Assembly: GCA_964106645.2 (NCBI GenBank)
Contig: CAXKZF020000004.1
Reading direction: 5' to 3' (one strand)
Length of the DNA: 64,000 bases
DNA from: Podarcis pityusensis
Lineage: Eukaryota
The notes under the pieces are model-generated. The model saw only the letters and a list, made by a program, of their open reading frames with translations, searched no databases and was not told where the DNA came from. The position numbers were made by a program, and so were the translations under genes. How positions within the stretch are numbered: the first letter of the stretch is position 1; each line of letters starts with the position of its first letter. Shown one piece after another: positions 3,658 to 62,385 of this stretch.

Positions 3658-6600
3658 CTGAAAGAGAAAGGGACAGGAGATGCTATCAACAAAACGGGGA
3701 ATCGGGTAGCAGAGCACACATCGCGTTGCAATATCTGAAGCAGCTTGCTTTGGGGACTGATACCCTGGGGACAAGTCCTCTATGTCTGTGGTCAGGAACT
3801 GCAAAGAGGTGGAGGGAACGTTCTTTCATATGTGGTGGACTTGTAAAAGAGTACAGTCATACCTCGGCTTGAAGTTGCTTCAGGTTGAGCACTTCTGGGT
3901 TGTGCTCCGCGGCGACCCGGAAATAATGGAATGCGTTACTTCTGGGTTTCGCCGCTCGCACATGCGCAGATGCTCAAAATGACGCCACACGCATGCGCGG
4001 AAGCGGTGAATCGCGACCCCGTGCATGTGCAGACGTGGGTTGCGTTTACTTCAGGATGCGAATAGGGTTCCAGAACGGATCCCGTTCGTATCCAGAGGTA
4101 CCACTGTATTGGGAAATAATCTATAATGAATGGTGGGGAAATGTTTAAAATTACTTTTCCAAAAAACCCCAGAGTACGGACAATTCAGAACGAAATTCCC
4201 AAGTGTCAAAAAAAGAAGGTTATATATGTATGCAACTACTGCATGCAGCCCGTGTTCTGTTAGCCCCAAAATGGAAAACAAGTGAGGTCCCAACTGAAGA
4301 AGAATGGTAACTTAAGTTGACGGAATATGCGCAGCTTGCAGATTTAACATATGGAAGCAGAGAACAAGAAGAACATACGTTTAGAGAAGATTGGGAAACT
4401 TTTATTTAGTATATGGGGGGGGGGGGAACTGTGCACACCTGAAAAGATTGGAAGCATTAAGATAAATTCAACAGTGTAAATAAGGTTTGATGGATGTATT
4501 GATGGAATATTGAATGGTTTAGTTTTTGTAAAATACGCAGGAAGCTATGATACGAAAAACGAACCATGGAAGGAGAAGAACGGAAGTCATTGATATTTTA
4601 ATGATGTTAAAATGAGTATTTCANNNNNNNNNNNNNNNNNNNNNNNNNNNNNNNNNNNNNNNNNNNNNNNNNNNNNNNNNNNNNNNNNNNNNNNNNNNNN
4701 NNNNNNNNNNNNNNNNNNNNNNNNNNNNNNNNNNNNNNNNNNNNNNNNNNNNNCCTCAGGCCAAAAGCAGCCTGAAGTGCTGCTTGCTGGATACTGGGCT
4801 TTCCAGCTGCAAACTACGATTTGATGGGCTTGTCTCCCTCTCTTCCCATTCCCTGAAGGCTCTCCAGAGCTTAAAGACTGACTCTGCAGGTCTGTGTATG
4901 CCGTGGGATGCTTTCAAAGCATCAAACCCCCTCTGTGCTGGCTGGGCCTGATGGGAAATGTAGTCCAAGACACCTGGTCGCTGCAGCAGACAGCGGCTGG
5001 GCTGGATGGATCTGGGGTCTGATTTCATCTGTCCGTATGGTTCTTGCCCAACTCACGTTCCCCAACACCCGGCCCACGGCCACCTACCTGCTTGATGTCG
5101 TGATACTGCCCTAGAAGGGCGTAGGGGCAGTAGGATATACTCATGGAAACGATGCCCATGGAGCTGATCATGATCATGGCGACGTACACATTGGGGAACA
5201 TGGCCATCACTGCCGTGCCAATGGAGAAGCCCAGAGTGCCCAGGATGTAGATCACTCGGATGCTGAGGTCGTAGTTGTCCAAGTATTTCTGTAGCAAGGC
5301 TGCAAAAAGGAGGCCAAGCATGTCGCCATTAGAGAAAAGCGCCCCGCGCTCTGGGTGCAATTAGCCACCCAACTCTCCCTCATTAAAGCACTTCATGGCC
5401 AGGGCCTTCCTAACTTCCCCCGCTCAGTCCCCTTCCTCGATTCTCTTATCTGTCAGCCACACACGGCTTCTCTGGTCCGGGGTGCAGAGACTTTCAGCTG
5501 CCGGCACAGAACCTCTTACCTGAACACACAGCTGCAGTAGCGGCATAGATGACCAATCCCCAACAGCCCATCTGAACGCCGGCATTGTAGGCATGCAGTT
5601 CGGTGGAATTCGAAGGGGCCTGCAGTGAAGCAATAGAGCAGGGGTCAGCAAACTTTTTCAGCAGGGGGCCAGTCCACTGTCCCTCAGACCTTGTGGGGGG
5701 CTGGACTATATTTTTTTGGGGGAATGAACAAATTCCTATGCCCCACAAATAACCCAGAGATGCATTTTAAATCAAAGCAGACGTTCTGCTCATGTAAAAA
5801 CGCCAGGCAGGCCTCACAAATAACCCAGAGATGCATTTTAAATAAAAGGACACATTCTACTCATGTAAGAACATGCTGATTCCCGGACCGTCCGCAGGCC
5901 GGATTTAGAAGGTGACTGGCCCGGATCTGGCCCCCAGGCCTTACGTTTGCCTACCCATGCAATTAAGATTTAAGCAAAGGCCACACTATGAACAAGAGCA
6001 TGGAAGTGTCAATGTTCGCACCTCTCTACCTAGCCAAAGATTGATTGATTGGTTTTATTAAATTTGCATACAGCCCTTCATCCAGATATCGCAGGGCAGC
6101 TCAGAACATAAAAACAGATAATAAAAACAAGAAAGAAGAAATATCCCTCCCCAATATATTTAAAAGGACACAGAATATTAATCAGCCAAACGCCTGGTTG
6201 AAGAGGAACATTTTTGCATGGTGAAATCTAAAAATCTAATGAAGGTGCCAGGTGAGTCTCCCTGGGGTGAGCATTCCACAAACGTGGAGCCACAGCAGAA
6301 AAGGCCTGCTCTCGTGTCACTGGTCTCTGAACCTCTTGCGGAGGAGGCACACAAAGAAGGGCCTCAGAAGATAACTGCAGGGTCCAGGCTGGTTCCTATA
6401 GGGAGAGGCGGTCCTTGAGGAATTCTGGTCCTGAAGCACTTAAGGCTTTACAGGTCAAAACCAGAACTTTGAATTGGGCCTGGACACTAATTGGCAGCCA
6501 GTGCAATTGGGCCGGGATTTACACTTTCGTTTATTCATCTGGCTTTTTTTCAACCTGTGTTTCAAAGAAAGATTCTCGAGAAACTCGGAACGATAAAAGG

Positions 6601-33100: not shown

Positions 33101-35299
33101 GTGTGGTGTCAGTTGACGTTTCAAGGATAGCTGAAATAGTTGGCTTTTGAACAGGGATTTGCAATGACCTGGGGAGAACCTCAGAAAAAGCAGAACAGCT
33201 CAATAGTGTGCTACAGGTAAGGCCTAGAACCACAAAAGGCCAGGAATGAGTACAAAAACGTGTGTCCAATAGTGTCCTTAGGGTACGGTGAATGGGGGTG
33301 ATCGCCCCAGTCCTCAAACCTGGGGAGCCACGCACAGGTTAACACAAAGCACTGTGTCACCCAAGGTGAATGTTACTGCCTTGGCTCTTTGCTTCCCTCT
33401 CCTTTGGCTAAGGAAGCTGTTCTGCTGCTGCTAACATGGCAGTAGCCACTTCCCCTCTTACTCTTAGGAAGGTGGGGGGTCCTTCTCCGAGCCAGGCATT
33501 CTCGAGGTAGCCCAGACCAGCGCTTGTGTCACCGCCACTTCAAAGTTGCTTTCAACATCACTAAATGAACGCTGGGCTTTCCTTTGAAGCCTGGAACAAA
33601 CTAGCCTACCCATAAATACAGCAGAGAGCTAAATCCTTTAGGATTGCCAAATGCACACCTGGGGAGGCAATAATGGGATGGCTGTATTGGAAAGTTGGGG
33701 GGGGGGGGTAATTTAGTAGAGTGCAACATGTAGCAGTATCTATTGCCAGGTAGTTGGATGTGCAGCTGGTGATATCGGCCTTGACTAGAAGCCAGGGTGG
33801 ATAAAAAAAATCAAAATAAAAAAAATATCAGATTTTTAAAATTTAAATTGGATTTTTTTTAAAAAAATTGGATTTTTAATATAAAATGCTTTTGAAGGAA
33901 AAATCTTTCTAAAGATAACTTTGTATTTAATTTACACTATAGTCCAAAGGCTATTCATCAGGAAATAAGGATTTAAGTTTTTCATGTGTGCTAAAACTCA
34001 GCCTAAATTTTTGGTTTTTGTTTTAAAAATGTTTTAACCACATCAGTTAACAAACATGTATACATATGCTATAATGTTATTGTTTTAGTTAAATAAATTG
34101 TTTAAATTGTTATTAAGGAAACGATTGTTTTTCTCCTTCCAATTAAGTACAGCAGCAAAGTTGTCCAAATATAAACAGTTAACTTATTAAACCTCATAAT
34201 AATTTCATAATTATCTGTCTATTTCTAATAGTATAACCAAATCAGTAATTTTTGATATAACTGTAAAACCTACTCTGAAAATTTATTATTCCAAAAATGA
34301 AACCTTCATCTTGTTGTAAATATTAAGATTATACCAGCAAGAATGAGTCTTTCTGTAATTTTTTTTTTATTTAAATCAAGTTTTACTGACTAGTAAAGCA
34401 TGATTCAAATTGATTTGATTTAAATCAAATCCACCCTGCCAGAAGCTAAAAGTTTTGCAAGTCCTCTAAGGATGAAAGTAGAAAAAGGAAAAGGGAAGGC
34501 ACAGAAGGCAGAAAAATTAAGGTAACTCTTAGGAAACACAAACACACCAATAATGGGATCAGTTAATTTCTTCATATGATACCTACAAATCTGCCTTATT
34601 CAGTGAAAGTTACAGTTCCTTCTAACTCCCAACGCCACCACACCAGCCTTGTAGGGTTTGGATATTCCTTCCTGAACTAGGGTTTTGTTGAATGATACTG
34701 CAGCATGGCGATTGGCTGGCACACAGGGAGGCAAACTGGGTTGGGTGGCTGGATGATGGCGTTACTTCTCACGTCAGCATGGCACCTCCCTTGGAGCCAA
34801 GACACTGGTATGGAAAGTAATCGCATGATCCACTCAACCCGCATGGCTCCTGGTTACACTGATGTGGATTGAGGGTTCCACCATAGGAGTGGCTTCCTGA
34901 GAACCAGTGGCTTGTATGCTGTGGTCCCTGCTTGCCTCTTGAAGAGGTGGGTACAGCAAAATCAGAAAACACCTCCAGAGGGCCAACTTGTTCTGCTGTT
35001 TCATGGATAACAGAGGATGAACGATGGCGACTGTTCATGGTTATGCAATTCCACTTACCTATTTGTAACAATACTGGCGTCACCAAAGCTGTCTCCATGG
35101 CGTAACAGAATTCTCTGCCAAACATCACGGCCCCGTGCATCACCCAGAGACGTACAGGTATCCGATCTATGGATCCTTCGCTTATGGTCTCTTCCTTACT
35201 CTCATTCTCGTTTTCCGGTTTCTGAAGCTGAACCACGGGTAGCTCTTCAACTTGCATAGATTCCGAGTCAGCATTCTGGGGAGCCATTTTCATTACCAT
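3292..35299 (-). CDS. SLC45A4: Solute carrier family 45 member 4 (MFS-fold transporter); spliced CDS of 7 coding exons, 787 aa
   Basis: The joined exons (241+189+180+1076+100+212+366 = 2364 nt) read without a break from [16 protein letters not shown] to [10 protein letters not shown]. Recognisable SLC45A4 segments include [30 protein letters not shown] and [19 protein letters not shown]. All introns are GT-AG with matching phases. Confidence 0.97.
3790..4623 (+). mobile_element. L1-clade LINE ORF2 3' fragment, interrupted by a MITE
   Basis: Translates to [18 protein letters not shown] (part of a C-terminal Cys/His motif) and continues after 4108 in degenerate form. Confidence 0.6.
3854..4106. 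mobile_element. Tc1/mariner-superfamily MITE
   Basis: TA|CAGTCATACCTC...GAGGTACCACTG|TA termini with TA duplication; internal GCATGCGC-like repeats. Confidence 0.8.
4624..4753. other. Assembly gap (130 N)
   Basis: Run of n characters in the last SLC45A4 intron. Confidence 1.
5088..5299 (-). CDS. SLC45A4: SLC45A4 coding exon 6 (212 nt)
   Basis: Acceptor CCTTTTTGCAG|CCTTG and donor GCAG|GTAGGT. Encodes [13 protein letters not shown]...[13 protein letters not shown]. Confidence 0.96.
5520..5619 (-). CDS. SLC45A4: SLC45A4 coding exon 5 (100 nt)
   Basis: Acceptor CTTCACTGCAG|GCCCCT and donor TCAG|GTAAGA. Encodes [33 protein letters not shown]. Confidence 0.95.
5639..5959. mobile_element. hAT-type MITE (family A)
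   Basis: TIRs CAGGGGTCAGCAAAC / GTTTGCCTACCCATG and a degenerate 8-bp TSD (caatagag/caattaag). Homologous copies at 49746 and 52574. Confidence 0.8.
6040..6515 (-). mobile_element. Older L2-like LINE 3' fragment
   Basis: Diverged similarity to the reverse complement of the L2 at 61488-62385 (e.g. ggctttacaggtcaaaaccagaactttgaattg), with an (ATTG)n tail remnant. Confidence 0.55.
6859..7934 (-). CDS. SLC45A4: SLC45A4 coding exon 4 (1076 nt; includes the large central cytoplasmic loop)
   Basis: Acceptor CCTTCCTTAG|GTCTTGG and donor CAAG|GTGAGT. Lies within ORF 6796..8100 and reads [15 protein letters not shown]...[16 protein letters not shown]. Confidence 0.97.
8553..8700 (-). mobile_element. 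tRNA-derived squamate SINE (Squam3-like), 3' part
   Basis: Reverse complement of the element at 13985-14155 (ggaagctgccttatac...ctggctggcagcagc). The family name is tentative. Confidence 0.45.
8734..8913 (-). CDS. SLC45A4: SLC45A4 coding exon 3 (180 nt)
   Basis: Acceptor TTCCTGCCAG|GCCTGG and donor GCTG|GTATGT. Encodes [60 protein letters not shown]. Confidence 0.96.
9159..9633 (+). mobile_element. L2 LINE 3' fragment with (TTA)n tail, split by a 90-bp MITE
   Basis: Colinear with 62012-62385 on both sides of 9314-9403. Confidence 0.85.
9314..9403. mobile_element. 90-bp hAT-type miniature element
   Basis: TIRs CATAGCTGACAAC / GTTGACACCTATG (11/13 complementary) and a perfect 8-bp TSD CACCCACC (9306-9313 and 9404-9411). 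Confidence 0.85.
10350..10571 (-). mobile_element. Bov-B (RTE) LINE 3' fragment with an internal deletion
   Basis: (TTG)n tail followed by tttagtcgtgtccgactcttcgtgacccca, the reverse complement of the 3' end at 11056-11173. Confidence 0.85.
10757..10789. repeat. (TAC)n microsatellite
   Basis: Seen directly. Confidence 0.9.
10855..11178 (+). mobile_element. Bov-B (RTE) LINE 3' fragment
   Basis: [40 protein letters not shown]...[12 protein letters not shown] is a typical Bov-B RT C-terminus; (CAA)n tail. Confidence 0.9.
11823..12258 (+). mobile_element. LINE 3' UTR of uncertain clade
   Basis: T-rich tract ending ggtctgtgaccgtaataaa followed by an (ATTC)n tail. Confidence 0.4.
12481..12669 (-). 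CDS. SLC45A4: SLC45A4 coding exon 2 (189 nt)
   Basis: Acceptor TCTTTTAG|GTCTTCCT and donor ATAG|GTAAAT. Encodes [63 protein letters not shown]. Confidence 0.96.
13237..13455 (-). mobile_element. CR1 LINE 3' fragment
   Basis: agaatcat...gggtcatctagtccaacccc...catccatgacagatggcca, shared with 57164-57570. Confidence 0.75.
13456..13980 (-). mobile_element. Probable L1-clade LINE 3' fragment
   Basis: Degenerate minus-strand coding-like segment ([12 protein letters not shown]-like) with an A/T-rich 3' region. Confidence 0.4.
13985..14155 (+). mobile_element. tRNA-derived squamate SINE (Squam3-like)
   Basis: Head with A/B-box remnants (gtagagcat...ggttcaaccccc) and tail gctagatggacca...cttcctatgtt. 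Confidence 0.5.
14234..14583 (-). mobile_element. Sauria SINE
   Basis: Full-length copy with a tRNA-like head (ggttcgaatcccc on the minus strand) and an ACCTTT tail; near-identical to other copies in the window. Confidence 0.92.
16369..16723 (-). mobile_element. Sauria SINE
   Basis: Same family as 14234-14583. Confidence 0.9.
18467..18816 (+). mobile_element. Sauria SINE
   Basis: gggacgcgggtggcgctgtgg...ccctttacctt with a 14-bp TSD TTATACAGCAAGAG (18453-18466, 18817-18830). Confidence 0.95.
18850..19370 (+). mobile_element. Probable RTE-type retroelement 5' region fragment
   Basis: Motifs such as ggctaaaccagggagggtag and aaactctgatcctaaacctccgctgcc resemble RTE 5' UTRs; recognised from memory only. 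Confidence 0.3.
19790..19926 (-). mobile_element. Probable RTE-type element 5' end
   Basis: The minus strand begins TTGTTGGCAAGCGTCTGTCTTGAGAGACAATGGAG with a short hairpin. Family assignment is tentative. Confidence 0.3.
20155..20296 (+). mobile_element. SINE with tRNA-Lys-like head and CR1-like tail
   Basis: gctcagacggtagagcatgagactc..atctcaggg...ttcgagccccac matches tRNA-Lys(CTT); tail gggtcccttcc...ttctgtgattcta. A second copy lies at 24021-24155. Confidence 0.7.
21017..21097 (+). mobile_element. tRNA-Ile-like SINE head, truncated next to an L2 tail
   Basis: tagctcagttggtcagagcatggtgctgataacgcc...ggttcgatacccgta; the acceptor stem does not pair. Confidence 0.6.
21098..21551 (-). mobile_element. 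L2 LINE 3' fragment with expanded (CAA)n/(TTA)n tail
   Basis: Reverse complement of 61975-62350. Confidence 0.88.
22615..22964 (-). mobile_element. Sauria SINE
   Basis: Full length, with a 13-bp TSD GGTCCTATCTATA (22602-22614, 22966-22978). Confidence 0.95.
24021..24155 (+). mobile_element. SINE with tRNA-Lys-like head and CR1-like tail
   Basis: Homologous to 20155-20296. Confidence 0.6.
25838..27095. mobile_element. Non-autonomous Tc1/mariner-superfamily element with an internal GC-rich palindromic array
   Basis: TA|CAGTGGTACCCCGCAAGACG...CGTCTTGCGAGGCACCACTG|TA with subterminal CGCAAGACG repeats; no transposase-like ORF. Confidence 0.88.
26140..26740. repeat. Tandem array of four long palindromes
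   Basis: Unit GCAAAGACTTTCGCCCCCCGCCCGCCTTCAGAAGAGGTCC-A-(reverse complement), centred at 26206, 26339, 26513 and 26682. Confidence 0.95.
27475..27828. mobile_element. Short MITE of the same family as 25838-27095, in inverted orientation
   Basis: TA|CAGTGGTGCCTCGCAAGACG...CGTCTTGCGAGGTACCACTG|TA. Its ends are reverse complements of the long copy's ends. Confidence 0.88.
31168..31702 (+). mobile_element. Solo LTR (535 bp; Gypsy-like or ERV)
   Basis: TG...CA termini, 5-bp TSD TCTAC (31163-31167, 31703-31707), AATAAA at 31651. Confidence 0.75.
33793..34438. mobile_element. AT-rich hAT-type MITE (family B), copy 1
   Basis: TIR CAGGGTGGAT / ATCCACCCTG with 8-bp TSD ctagaagc/ccagaagc. Confidence 0.9.
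35059..35299 (-). CDS. SLC45A4: SLC45A4 coding exon 1 (N-terminus and TM1), 241 nt coding
   Basis: ATG at 35299, with further in-frame ATGs at 35293 and 35287. Donor ATAG|GTAAGT at 35059/35058. Encodes 80 codons plus 1 nt. Confidence 0.95.
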
Positions 35300-35347
35300 A
35301 AAAATATATATAATATATATATTTATATATTTATTTATTTATTCTAC

Positions 35348-35494
35348 CTATATAAATAACACTATCATCTCTAACGATAAGTTACGGTGTCTTCTCTTTC
35401 TGATGGCGTCACGTTCCTCGTGCAAGCAATATTTGTAATTCCCCTCGTTACGAACAGGTTCCGTCATCAATTTCGTGTGTAGGCGTTGAAACAT
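35348..35494 (-). other. uORF4, 48 aa (MFQRLHTKLMTEPVRNEGNYKYCLHEERDAIRKRRHRNLSLEMIVLFI*)
   Basis: ATG at 35494 to TAG at 35350-35348. Ends 48 nt before the main ATG and contains 10 CpGs in 147 nt. Confidence 0.6.
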
Positions 35495-35535
35495 TCAGAG
35501 GAACAAAAAGCTATATTTGGTAGGAAATTCAACAT
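35467..35535 (-). other. uORF3, 22 aa (MLNFLPNIAFCSSECFNAYTRN*)
   Basis: ATG at 35535 to TGA at 35469-35467. The stop overlaps an internal ATG of uORF4 (TGATG). Confidence 0.55.
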
Positions 35536-35560
35536 ATGGCTTGCTGGGCTTGCGTTTTGC

Positions 35561-35707
35561 TTACTGTGAACTAGAGTTAAAAATCCATAATTGCCATTCA
35601 GTTAATACCAGTTTCATAATTATTATTGAAGAGGTGCTGAAGTTGTTTTGCTTGCTACACAAAGGTGGAAAGGTGACACAAACAGCTGCTCCACTGGTAA
35701 TCCCCAT
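35561..35707 (-). other. uORF1, 48 aa (MGITSGAAVCVTFPPLCSKQNNFSTSSIIIMKLVLTEWQLWIFNSSSQ*)
   Basis: ATG at 35707 to TAA at 35563-35561, inside the UTR part of the exon. The frame is also open from the exon's first base. Confidence 0.6.
35577..35597 (-). other. uORF2, 6 aa (MAIMDF*), nested in uORF1 in another frame
   Basis: ATG GCA ATT ATG GAT TTT TAA read directly from the sequence. Confidence 0.55.
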
Positions 35708-35751
35708 CGAGTGGCTGATTAATCTGCAAAGAAGGACAAAAGGCAAGTCAC

Positions 35752-44678: not shown

Positions 44679-44904
44679 CAGTGGACGCTCGGGTTGCGAA
44701 CGTGATCCGCAGCTGCGCGTCTGTGCATGCGCGGGTTGCGATTCAGCGCTTCTGTGCATGCGCAAAGCGCAATTCAGTACTTCTGCGCATGCGCGACCAC
44801 CAAAAACGAAAGTAACCTGTTCCGGTACTTCCGGGTTTTGGCAGTCCGTAACCCAAAAAAACACACAAAAAACCCCTGAAGCGTCTGTAACCCGAGGTAG
44901 ACTG
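44679..44904. mobile_element. Tc1/mariner-superfamily MITE, related to 3854-4106 (inverted)
   Basis: TA|CAGTGGACGCTCGGGTT...AACCCGAGGTAGACTG|TA with three GCATGCGC repeats. Confidence 0.78.
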
Positions 44905-48485: not shown

Positions 48486-48857
48486 GGGACGCGAGTGGCG
48501 CTGTGGTCTAAACTACCGAGCCTCTTGGGCTTGCCAATCAGAAGGTCGGCGGTTCGAATCCCCGCAACGGGGTGAGCTCCTGTTGCTCGGTCCCAGCTCC
48601 TGCCAACCTAGCAGTTTGAAAGCACTCCAGTGCAAGTAGATAAATAGGTATCACTGCAGAGAGAAGGTAAACGGCATTTCCATGCGCTGCTCTGGTTTTG
48701 GTGTTCCATTGCACCAGAAGTGGCTTAGTCATGTTGGCCGCATGACCCAGAAAATTGTCTATGGACCAACACTGGCTTCCTTGACCTGTAAAGCGAGATG
48801 AGCGCCTCAACCCCAGTCATCTGCGCTGGACTTAACAGTCAGGGGTCCTTTACCTTT
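48486..48857 (+). mobile_element. Sauria SINE (more diverged subfamily)
   Basis: gggacgcgagtggcgctgtgg...gtcctttaccttt. Confidence 0.88.
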
Positions 48858-54276: not shown

Positions 54277-54622
54277 AAGGTAAAGGGACCCCTGACCATT
54301 AGGTCCAGTTGTGGCTGGCTCTGGGGTTGCGGTGCTCATCTCGCTTTATTGGCCAAGGGAGCTGGCGTACAGCTTCCGGGTCATGTGGCCAGCATGACTA
54401 AGCTGCTTCTGGAGAACCAGAGCAGTGCACAGAAGCGCCGTTTACCTTCCCGCCGTAGCAGTATTTATTTACTTGCACTTTGACGTGCTTTCGAACTGCC
54501 AGGTTGGCAGGAGCAGGGACCGAGCAACGGGAGCTCACCCCGTCGTGGGGATTCGAACCGCCGACCTTCTGATAAGCAAGTCCTAGCCTCTGTGGTTTAA
54601 CCCACAGTGCCACCCACGTCCC
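54277..54622 (-). mobile_element. Sauria SINE inserted in a (TAC)n tract
   Basis: Full-length copy flanked by tactactac repeats. Confidence 0.9.
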
Positions 54623-61487: not shown

Positions 61488-62353
61488 CCATCCTGGAGTG
61501 CCTGGAGGCGGTTGGAGGATGGATGGCAGCTAACAGATTGAGGTTGAATCCTGACAAGACAGAAGTACTGTTTTGGGGGGACAGGGGGCGGGCGAGTGTG
61601 GGGGATTCCCTTGTCCTGAATGGGGTAACTGTGCCCCTGAAGGACCAGGTGCGCAGCCTGGGAGTCATTTTGGACTCACAGCTGTCCATGGAGGTGCAGG
61701 TTAATTCTGTGTCCAGGGCAGCTGTCTACCAGCTCCACCTGGTATGCAGGCTGAGACCCTACCTGCCTGCGGACTGTCTTGCCAGAGTGGTGCATGCTCT
61801 AGTTATCTCCCACTTGGACTACTGTAATGCGCTCTATGTGGGGCTACCTTTGAAGGTGACCCGGAAACTGCAATTAATCCAGAATGCGGCAGCTAGACTG
61901 GTGACTGGCCGCCGGGACCACATAACACCGGTCCTGAGAGATCTACATTGGCTCCCAGTACGTTTCCGAGCACAATTCAAAGTGTTGGTGCTGACCTTTA
62001 AAGCCCTAAACGGCCTCGGTCCTGTATACCTGAAGGAGCGTCTCCACCCCCATCGTTCAGCCTGGACACTGAGATCCAGCGCCGAGGGCCTTCTGGCGGT
62101 TCCCTCATTGCGAGAAGTAAGGTTACAGGGAACCAGACAGAGGGCCTTCTCGGTAGTGGCGCCCGCCCTGTGGAACGCCCTTCCTTCAGATGTGAAGGAA
62201 ATAAGCAGCTATCTTCTCTTTAGAAGACATCTGAAGGCAGCCCTGTTTAGGGAAGCTTTTAATATTTGATGCTGTATTGTTTTTAACACTTGATTGGAAG
62301 CCGCCCAGAGTGGCTGGGGAGACTCAGCCAAATGGGCGGGGTATAAATAATAA

Positions 62354-62385
<32 letters not shown>
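61488..62385 (+). mobile_element. L2 LINE, 5'-truncated, with about 260 open codons of the ORF2 C-terminus
   Basis: WMAANRLRLNPDKTE...LDYCNALY...QNAAARL...HITPVLRDLHWLP...LWNALP motifs and a (TTA)n tail. Confidence 0.93.

What the first reader, a model, noticed from the sequence alone, without database searches (positions are those of the whole stretch)
35348..35707. Dense uORF cassette upstream of a polyamine-transporter gene: candidate polyamine-sensing translational switch
Seen: the 424-nt leader in this exon holds 8 upstream AUGs (35707, 35617, 35597, 35588, 35535, 35494, 35467, 35368) forming four uORFs of 48, 6, 22 and 48 aa. They are nested or overlapping, with a TGATG stop/start junction at 35469-35465, and all four first AUGs have a pyrimidine at -3. 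Established: SLC45A4 has recently been reported to transport polyamines, and polyamine genes are often feedback-controlled during translation (AMD1 MAGDIS uORF, AZIN1 upstream coding region, OAZ frameshift, fungal HOL1 uORF). Inference: this cassette could be an undescribed polyamine- or eIF5A-responsive control module. uORF1 contains a Pro-Pro dipeptide (TFPPL).
Basis: partly seen in the sequence, partly recalled or inferred. Interest (0 to 1): 0.85.

Follow-up and report, generated by a model that had tools for sequence, protein, structure and literature searches.

The report
Ancient conserved uORF of SLC45A4
Just upstream of the gene for the polyamine and pain-linked transporter SLC45A4 sits a small reading frame whose start, length and last 18-20 codons have been kept from fish to mammals, so it is probably an undescribed brake on the transporter's synthesis; whether polyamines control it is untested.

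Summary
The eight AUGs and four uORFs are there, but their density is chance (9 AUGs expected). uORF4 and the TGATG junction are not kept beyond lizards, and TFPPL is absent in frog. The real element is uORF1 (35707-35561). In 10 orthologues (gecko to teleosts) and 3 divergent fish paralogues it keeps a weak first AUG just after the splice acceptor and an in-frame second AUG (35617). It also keeps an open frame and a 17-20 codon end, usually Trp-Ile...Gln-stop. Length changes are always multiples of three. The core is also frozen at synonymous sites (about 6-fold below the coding exon), so an RNA-level constraint overlaps it. The exon is very likely the one that forms circSLC45A4 (lead from scan note s1-729603). 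Best reading: a repressive conserved-peptide uORF that probably slows ribosomes near its stop. Polyamine sensing is plausible (about 0.3), but the Pro-Ser-stop, PPW, MAGDIS and frameshift hallmarks are absent. I found no paper describing it; two published 'SLC45A4 uORF' mentions exist, and the one I checked is a slip for SLC35A4. No ribosome or RNA-read evidence was obtained. The scan had not noted it on other DNA.

The parts
35059..35723 (-). First coding exon of SLC45A4 (665 nt): 424 nt of leader plus 241 nt of CDS. Very likely the orthologue of the single-exon 641-nt SLC45A4 circle.
   Evidence: Acceptor and donor; orthologous exon 527-1301 nt, 630-635 nt in two mammals; PMC12888668; next coding exon near 12757-12476
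35708..35725 (-). Splice acceptor and the 16-nt spacer to AUG1
   Evidence: Spacer 16 nt in 10 of 11 loci, 12 nt in frog, 17 nt in paralogue L019; used in spliced frog contig L006
35561..35707 (-). uORF1, 48 codons plus stop: the conserved uORF
   Evidence: Open frame in 10/10 orthologues against 2-6 stops in the other frames; alignments A2 and A3
35705..35707 (-). AUG1, suboptimal context (pyrimidine at -3, G at +4)
   Evidence: U at -3 and G at +4 in 11/11; C at -3 and G at +4 in L019
35615..35617 (-). AUG2, in frame with AUG1; purine at -3 in 13 of 14 loci, A at +4 in all
35579..35617 (-). 13-codon core (Met to Trp-Ile-Phe), near-invariant in amino acids and in bases
   Evidence: 92-100% base identity to gecko, bird-like, mammal, frog and cyprinid loci, against 76-93% for the TM1 coding stretch; synonymous changes 4 over 8 codons against 96 over 30
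35561..35578 (-). Tail and Gln-stop of uORF1
   Evidence: Gln-stop in 13 of 14 loci, with three different stop codons
35577..35597 (-). Nested out-of-frame uORF (6 aa; 3 aa from AUG 35588)
   Evidence: AUG 35588 kept in all orthologues and two paralogues, absent in L019; AUG 35597 lost in gecko and rodent
35467..35535 (-). uORF3. An AUG 9-47 nt after the uORF1 stop is present in all loci; peptide and length are not conserved.
35348..35494 (-). uORF4 (48 aa): not conserved as an ORF; the part from 35467 is shared only with gecko
   Evidence: no homologue in protein search
35348..35368 (-). 21-nt element (MIVLFI-stop). Bases are conserved in amniotes and L015, but its AUG is missing in L017 and L015.
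35059..35299 (-). Start of the SLC45A4 main ORF (in-frame AUGs 35299, 35293, 35287)

Best explanation
uORF1 is an ancient, translated, repressive conserved-peptide uORF. Ribosomes scanning the spliced SLC45A4 leader start partly at the weak AUG1 and mostly at the in-frame AUG2. They make the hydrophobic, Trp-containing last 17-20 residues and are slowed at or just before the Gln-stop. This blocks or queues following scanning complexes and feeds back on the weak AUG1, so transporter synthesis depends on leaky scanning or re-initiation. Shown: position, frame, starts, stop and core are under selection across bony vertebrates and across paralogues. Inferred: translation, repression, peptide-dependent stalling (about 0.5). 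Most speculative: the regulating signal (polyamines about 0.3; otherwise global start-site stringency, eIF2 stress or a constitutive brake). A second, base-level constraint overlaps the core in orthologues.
For: Frame open in 10/10 orthologues while the other frames hold 2-6 stops. AUG1-AUG2 distance is 69, 78, 90, 93, 102, 105 or 132 nt, always a multiple of 3, while the spacer to the main ORF (169-789 nt) takes all three frames. In six fish copies, paralogue pairs share only 40-56% of bases, yet the stop is at codon 21 in 6/6 (TAA, TAG, TGA), Trp12 in 6/6, Ile13 in 5/6 and Arg-Gln-stop in 5/6. Leu and Thr are kept through multi-base synonymous changes in the percomorph-like L018. L019 keeps Trp-Ile without the nested AUG. 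Conservation concentrated at the C-terminus is the pattern of sequence-dependent stalling uORFs, and 8 of 17 tested human CPuORFs repressed in a sequence-dependent way (PMC7530721). A conserved suboptimal uAUG is a known regulatory design (PMC8892498).
Against: Synonymous sites in the core are about 6-fold more conserved than in the CDS on the same tree (Poisson P about 2e-7), which peptide selection alone does not explain. Pooled pN/pS is only 0.42 for the core and 0.73 for the N-part. The Trp-to-stop distance differs (6, 8 or 9 residues). Paralogue peptides keep little beyond Met, Trp, Ile and Arg-Gln.
Confidence: 0.6

Rival explanations
1. The core is mainly an RNA element (protein- or microRNA-binding site, or a helix) acting in the mRNA leader or in circSLC45A4. 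The uORF around it is a generic, sequence-independent inhibitory uORF whose frame is kept only to place starts and stops.
For: Strong synonymous-site freezing; lizard and cyprinid agree at 39/39 aligned bases apart from a 3-nt indel. The exon matches the conserved circle whose knockdown affects neural progenitors by an unknown mechanism (PMC11260338; PMC12694936). The 21-nt element at 35368-35348 is conserved without needing its AUG. A possible 8-bp helix joins the bases before AUG1 with the core.
Against: The helix has no two-sided change and does not beat shuffles. Its pairing probability is near 1 only in gecko and rodent, about 0.3 in the window and 0.07 or less in the six others. No Rfam match. 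Paralogues lose the base sequence but keep frame, Trp-Ile and Gln-stop. The indel inside the core is exactly one codon.
Confidence: 0.22
2. One reading: a polyamine- or eIF5A-responsive switch of the AMD1, HOL1 or AZIN1 type that gives feedback on the transporter. This is a special case of the best explanation.
For: SLC45A4 transports polyamines (PMC12507699; PMC12130231; PMC12634670). Polyamine genes use uORF feedback (PMC10855120). A conserved weak AUG1 upstream of a conserved C-terminus fits AZIN1-like queuing logic.
Against: No Pro-Ser-stop, PPW or MAGDIS-like end. The Pro-Pro is far from the stop and absent in frog and L015. The transport direction is disputed (uptake, export, peroxisomal), so even the sign of any feedback is unknown. 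The link is association only.
Confidence: 0.3
3. The uORF makes a microprotein (48 aa, or 18 aa from AUG2) that acts in trans, possibly also from the circle, and underlies part of the circSLC45A4 phenotype.
For: Amino-acid change in the core (0.21 per codon) is as low as in the transporter's first membrane segment (0.07-0.27). Length is fixed at 48 aa in amniotes.
Against: The N-part changes 2.6 residues per codon and its length varies (40-64 aa overall). No Pfam, PDB or Atlas match. The profile search found only four unannotated Logan/ENA gene calls. Very short hydrophobic peptides are usually unstable (own knowledge).
Confidence: 0.1
4. Chance uORFs in an AT-rich leader.
For: True for AUG count, TGATG and uORF4.
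Against: Cannot explain uORF1: six distinct length changes all in frame (about 0.001), an open frame in every locus, and a core more conserved than coding sequence.
Confidence: 0.02

Closest known systems
Animal conserved-peptide uORFs (ESUCA set: PTP4A1, SLC6A8, MKKS and others; PMC7530721)
   Same: AUG-started uORF, peptide conserved over wide taxa, strongest at the C-terminus, upstream of a regulated gene
   Different: SLC45A4 not found in the supplements held (these may be cut). Two in-frame starts, synonymous freezing, persistence in paralogues, and location in a circularising exon.
AZIN1 upstream coding region (polyamine-induced stall and queuing; PMC7530721, PMC10855120)
   Same: Conserved weak start upstream of a conserved C-terminus; polyamine-pathway gene
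   Different: AUG rather than near-cognate start, a second better AUG in frame, no PPW motif
Fungal HOL1 uORF (MLLLPS-stop) and AMD1 uORF (MAGDIS-stop) (PMC10855120)
   Same: Short conserved peptide with a conserved last residue before the stop; HOL1 is also a polyamine transporter
   Different: 17-20 codons rather than 6; ends in Ser/Arg-Gln-stop; no proline; no sequence similarity
Arabidopsis bZIP11 uORF2, sucrose-induced stalling at the stop codon (Yamashita 2017, reference seen; the two-AUG layout is from my own knowledge)
   Same: Two in-frame AUGs, conserved proline-poor C-terminal part, possible stall at termination
   Different: No homology; plant transcription factor gene; the ligand is shown there and unknown here
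Hox and EIF5 inhibitory uORFs with conserved suboptimal AUG (PMC8892498)
   Same: Conserved pyrimidine at -3 of the uAUG
   Different: G at +4 (suboptimal, not 'poor' by that paper's rule); strong peptide-end conservation here
circSLC45A4 / hsa_circ_0001829 (PMC12888668, PMC11260338; Suenkel 2020 not held)
   Same: Single-exon 641-nt circle from the first annotated exon of SLC45A4; orthologous mammalian exons here are 630-635 nt
   Different: The reviews read give no mechanism and mention no uORF; back-splicing in this lizard was not tested

Membership tests
Conserved-peptide uORF (CPuORF) | AUG-started ORF in the spliced leader, ending before the main ORF | tested here: met
   spliced frog contig at the homologous acceptor
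Conserved-peptide uORF (CPuORF) | Peptide and frame conserved across distant taxa | tested here: met
Conserved-peptide uORF (CPuORF) | Non-synonymous rate well below synonymous rate | tested here: inconclusive
   Pooled pN/pS 0.42 (core), 0.73 (N-part); synonymous sites are themselves constrained
Conserved-peptide uORF (CPuORF) | Sequence-dependent repression or ribosome stalling | not testable with these tools
   Needs reporters, toeprinting or Ribo-seq
HOL1-type polyamine/eIF5A uORF | Pro-Ser-stop | tested here: not met
   Ends Ser-Gln-stop or Arg-Gln-stop
AMD1-type uORF | Hexapeptide MAGDIS-stop | tested here: not met
   the only 6-aa uORFs are unrelated and lose their AUG in some loci
AZIN1-type upstream coding region | Conserved weak start codon | tested here: met
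   Pyrimidine at -3 in all 13 loci with the 5' part; it is an AUG with +4 G, not a near-cognate codon
AZIN1-type upstream coding region | PPW pause motif near the end | tested here: not met
   No proline in the last 18 codons except one in the rodent; Pro-Pro far upstream and absent in frog and L015
Antizyme-type frameshift or stop read-through | Fixed frame relation between upstream ORF and main ORF | tested here: not met
   Spacer length mod 3 is 0, 1 or 2 depending on species
All polyamine-responsive uORFs | Output changes with polyamine level | not testable with these tools
   Needs DFMO and polyamine reporter assays
circSLC45A4 exon | Single first coding exon of about 640 nt between long introns | tested here: met
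   665 nt, 22-kb downstream intron; 641 nt in PMC12888668
circSLC45A4 exon | Back-splice junction in RNA of this species | not tested

The most novel reading that the evidence does not exclude
The last 17-20 codons of uORF1 form a proline-free arrest peptide that senses polyamines (or a derived amine) in the ribosome and tunes SLC45A4 synthesis. This would be a vertebrate counterpart of HOL1 feedback by a different chemistry, older than the fish-tetrapod split. The same frozen 39 bases would also be the working part of circSLC45A4.
Probability: 0.22. Interest if true: 0.88.

Novelty: new member of a known kind. Interest (0 to 1): 0.66.

Why it matters
SLC45A4 is a newly identified polyamine transporter and pain gene. 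The three functional papers I searched do not mention a UTR or feedback control where I looked. A leader element kept for over 400 million years (date from my own knowledge), and in duplicated fish copies, is the obvious place to look for how the transporter's level is set. It reduces the question of feedback on vertebrate polyamine transport to a few point-mutant reporters. It also gives the mechanism-less circSLC45A4 a precise 39-base candidate core, and warns that the exon's conservation, credited to the circle, may largely come from a uORF.

Tried and rejected
Dense cassette as a signal: chance. uORF4 as a conserved peptide: no homologue and not kept in bird-like, mammal, frog or fish loci. 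TGATG coupling: lizard and gecko only. Read-through or frameshift into the main ORF: the same frame in this lizard is a coincidence. TFPPL as an eIF5A motif: not at the stop and not universal. MIVLFI-stop as a HOL1-like hexapeptide: AUG missing in L017 and L015. Conserved RNA structure: no covariation, no Rfam hit. An 81-aa ORF closed by back-splicing: the immediate stop is in 8 of 11 loci but not in the two mammals or frog. Prior description: 'SLC45A4 uORF' in PMC5758873 cites Andreev 2015, which names only SLC35A4; the mention in bioRxiv 10.1101/106922 was not read. No paper holds the peptide motif or SLC45A4 plus microprotein. Supplement searches in two ORF catalogues missed the positive control too, so they are uninformative; the hyperconserved-UTR supplement gave no hit and was searched without a control. 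Protein P0033 looked human; I left it out of all alignments and did not fetch its contig.

Full report
Setting. The finding lies on the minus strand in the first coding exon (35723-35059) of SLC45A4. The large exon 7932-6859 matches the solved SLC45A4 structures at E=1e-150. The exon's 80 codons match a Gekko kuhli protein at 97% and named fish SLC45A4 proteins. The other coding exons lie from about 12757 down to 3295. The species is a lizard by inference. Sources name only L001 (Gekko kuhli) and L012 (Cirrhinus mrigala); my labels for the other loci (bird-like L002 and L009, rodent L003, mammal L017, tetrapod L015, frog L004-L007, fish L008 and L018, fish paralogues L013, L014, L019) are inferred from their proteins.

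Observation. Every AUG, length, the TGATG overlap, the -3 pyrimidines and TFPPL are as stated. None of this exceeds chance in a 36% GC leader: 8 AUGs against 9.0 expected, TGATG in 39% of shuffles. The leader is longer than 424 nt, because a frog contig enters the homologous acceptor from an upstream exon. Exon 1 was not located in the window.

What is conserved. I fetched the DNA around orthologous exons. uORF1 (35707-35561) is present in all that reach far enough upstream; L010 and L011 hold only about 160 nt and could not be judged. AUG1 sits 16 nt after the acceptor (12 in frog, 17 in L019) with a pyrimidine at -3 and G at +4. AUG2 (35617) is in frame, 69-132 nt downstream and always a multiple of three, with a purine at -3 in 13 of 14 loci. 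For L014 I picked AUG1 by frame alone, so that case is weaker. The frame has no stop in 10/10 orthologues while the other frames hold 2-6. The last 18 codons are nearly identical from lizard to mammals, and apart from a one-codon indel the core is the same in a cyprinid. Three divergent fish paralogues share only 40-56% of bases over this stretch. They still keep exactly 20 codons from AUG2 and Trp at 12, and mostly Ile at 13 and Arg-Gln-stop, with three different stop codons. By contrast, the spacer to the main ORF is 169-789 nt in any frame, and identity falls to 30-58% outside squamates in the uORF3/uORF4 body.

A second layer. In orthologues the 13-codon core is more conserved than the transporter's first membrane segment (92-100% against 76-93% of bases). 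Synonymous changes are 4 over 8 invariant codons against 96 over 30 in the CDS on the same tree (Poisson P about 2e-7). Part of this may be the nested out-of-frame AUG at 35588 and out-of-frame stops; part may be an RNA element. RNA structure is not supported. An earlier scan note (s1-729603) pointed to circSLC45A4. The literature confirms a 641-nt single-exon circle from this gene with a role in neural progenitors and no known mechanism. The orthologous mammalian exons here are 630-635 nt, so the identification is likely but was not shown by reads.

How it probably works. Shown: selection on start sites, frame, stop position and core. Inferred: most scanning ribosomes are captured by AUG2 (or AUG1, or the nested AUG), so the main ORF is repressed and is reached by leaky scanning or re-initiation. 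Conservation that peaks in the last 17-20 residues and ends in a kept Gln-stop is the pattern of nascent-peptide stalling uORFs (PMC7530721). A stall would queue scanning complexes and raise use of the weak AUG1, as described for AZIN1. The variable Trp-to-stop distance (6, 8 or 9) and loose paralogue peptides argue for caution. I put a repressive selected uORF at about 0.9, peptide-dependent stalling at about 0.5, and polyamine control at about 0.3. These readings overlap, so the confidences do not sum to one.

Comparison with known systems. It meets the conservation criteria of a conserved-peptide uORF; the rate-ratio test is inconclusive and function is untestable here. It fails the sequence hallmarks of HOL1 (Pro-Ser-stop), AMD1 (MAGDIS), AZIN1 (PPW) and antizyme (fixed frame), as these are described in PMC10855120. 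It may work like them, but it is not a member by sequence. It shares the conserved suboptimal uAUG design of the Hox and EIF5 uORFs.

Novelty. No held paper contains the peptide motif or discusses an SLC45A4 uORF. Of two passing mentions, the one I traced cites a paper that names only SLC35A4. No Pfam, PDB or Atlas match; the profile search gave four unannotated gene calls. It may still be listed, unnamed, in large ORF catalogues: my supplement searches were uninformative or possibly cut. Suenkel 2020, Ivanov 2018 and Vindu 2021 were not held.

Limits. Fourteen small Logan assemblies guessed to be RNA hold 66-78% of the exon's words, which is only a weak hint of expression in related species. 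One human-looking hit (P0033) was left out. The gene was searched exon by exon, with no joined model. The N run at 4624-4753 was left as it is. Sampling is 14 sequences with a hand-set tree and parsimony counts, with no shark or lamprey.

Verdict. The element is a deeply conserved, apparently undescribed uORF overlapping a base-level constraint in a known circular-RNA exon. New member of a known kind; interest 0.66.

Noticed in passing
window 35368-35348 (-): 21-nt AT-rich element 76-95% identical in amniotes and L015, kept even where its AUG is lost; possibly a second RNA element next to the main start.
   Followed up: partly
window 35540-35533 (-): A GCCAT-ATG motif shortly after the uORF1 stop is kept in amniotes, L015 and the distant paralogue L019; it may be a re-initiation site.
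   Followed up: partly
window 35715-35708 with 35599-35592 (-): Possible 8-bp helix between the bases just before AUG1 and the core; perfect only in gecko and rodent; no compensatory change.
   Followed up: yes
window 35723-35719 (-): A back-splice would stop the main frame one codon after the junction in lizards, bird-like loci, L015 and fish, but not in the two mammals or frog.
   Followed up: partly
window 48486-48857 / 22964-22614; 54277-54622 / 18816-18469; 61976-62382 / 21550-21144: Three inverted repeat pairs (79-87% identity, 350-400 nt) on either side of the exon, far from it; they could aid back-splicing.
   Followed up: no
window 35657-35655 (-); L002, L003, L009, L017: An acceptor-like AG inside uORF1 in bird-like and mammal loci could skip AUG1 while keeping AUG2; weaker in the lizard; use not tested.
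   Followed up: no
window 44680-44900: CpG-rich stretch with repeated GCGCATGC motifs; looks like a repeat rather than the promoter.
   Followed up: partly
window 4624-4753: 130-base N run downstream of the exon ending near 5046; left untouched.
   Followed up: no
literature: PMC5758873: Its 'SLC45A4 uORF' example is a slip for SLC35A4 (cited paper PMC4383229 has 0 against 16 mentions).
   Followed up: yes
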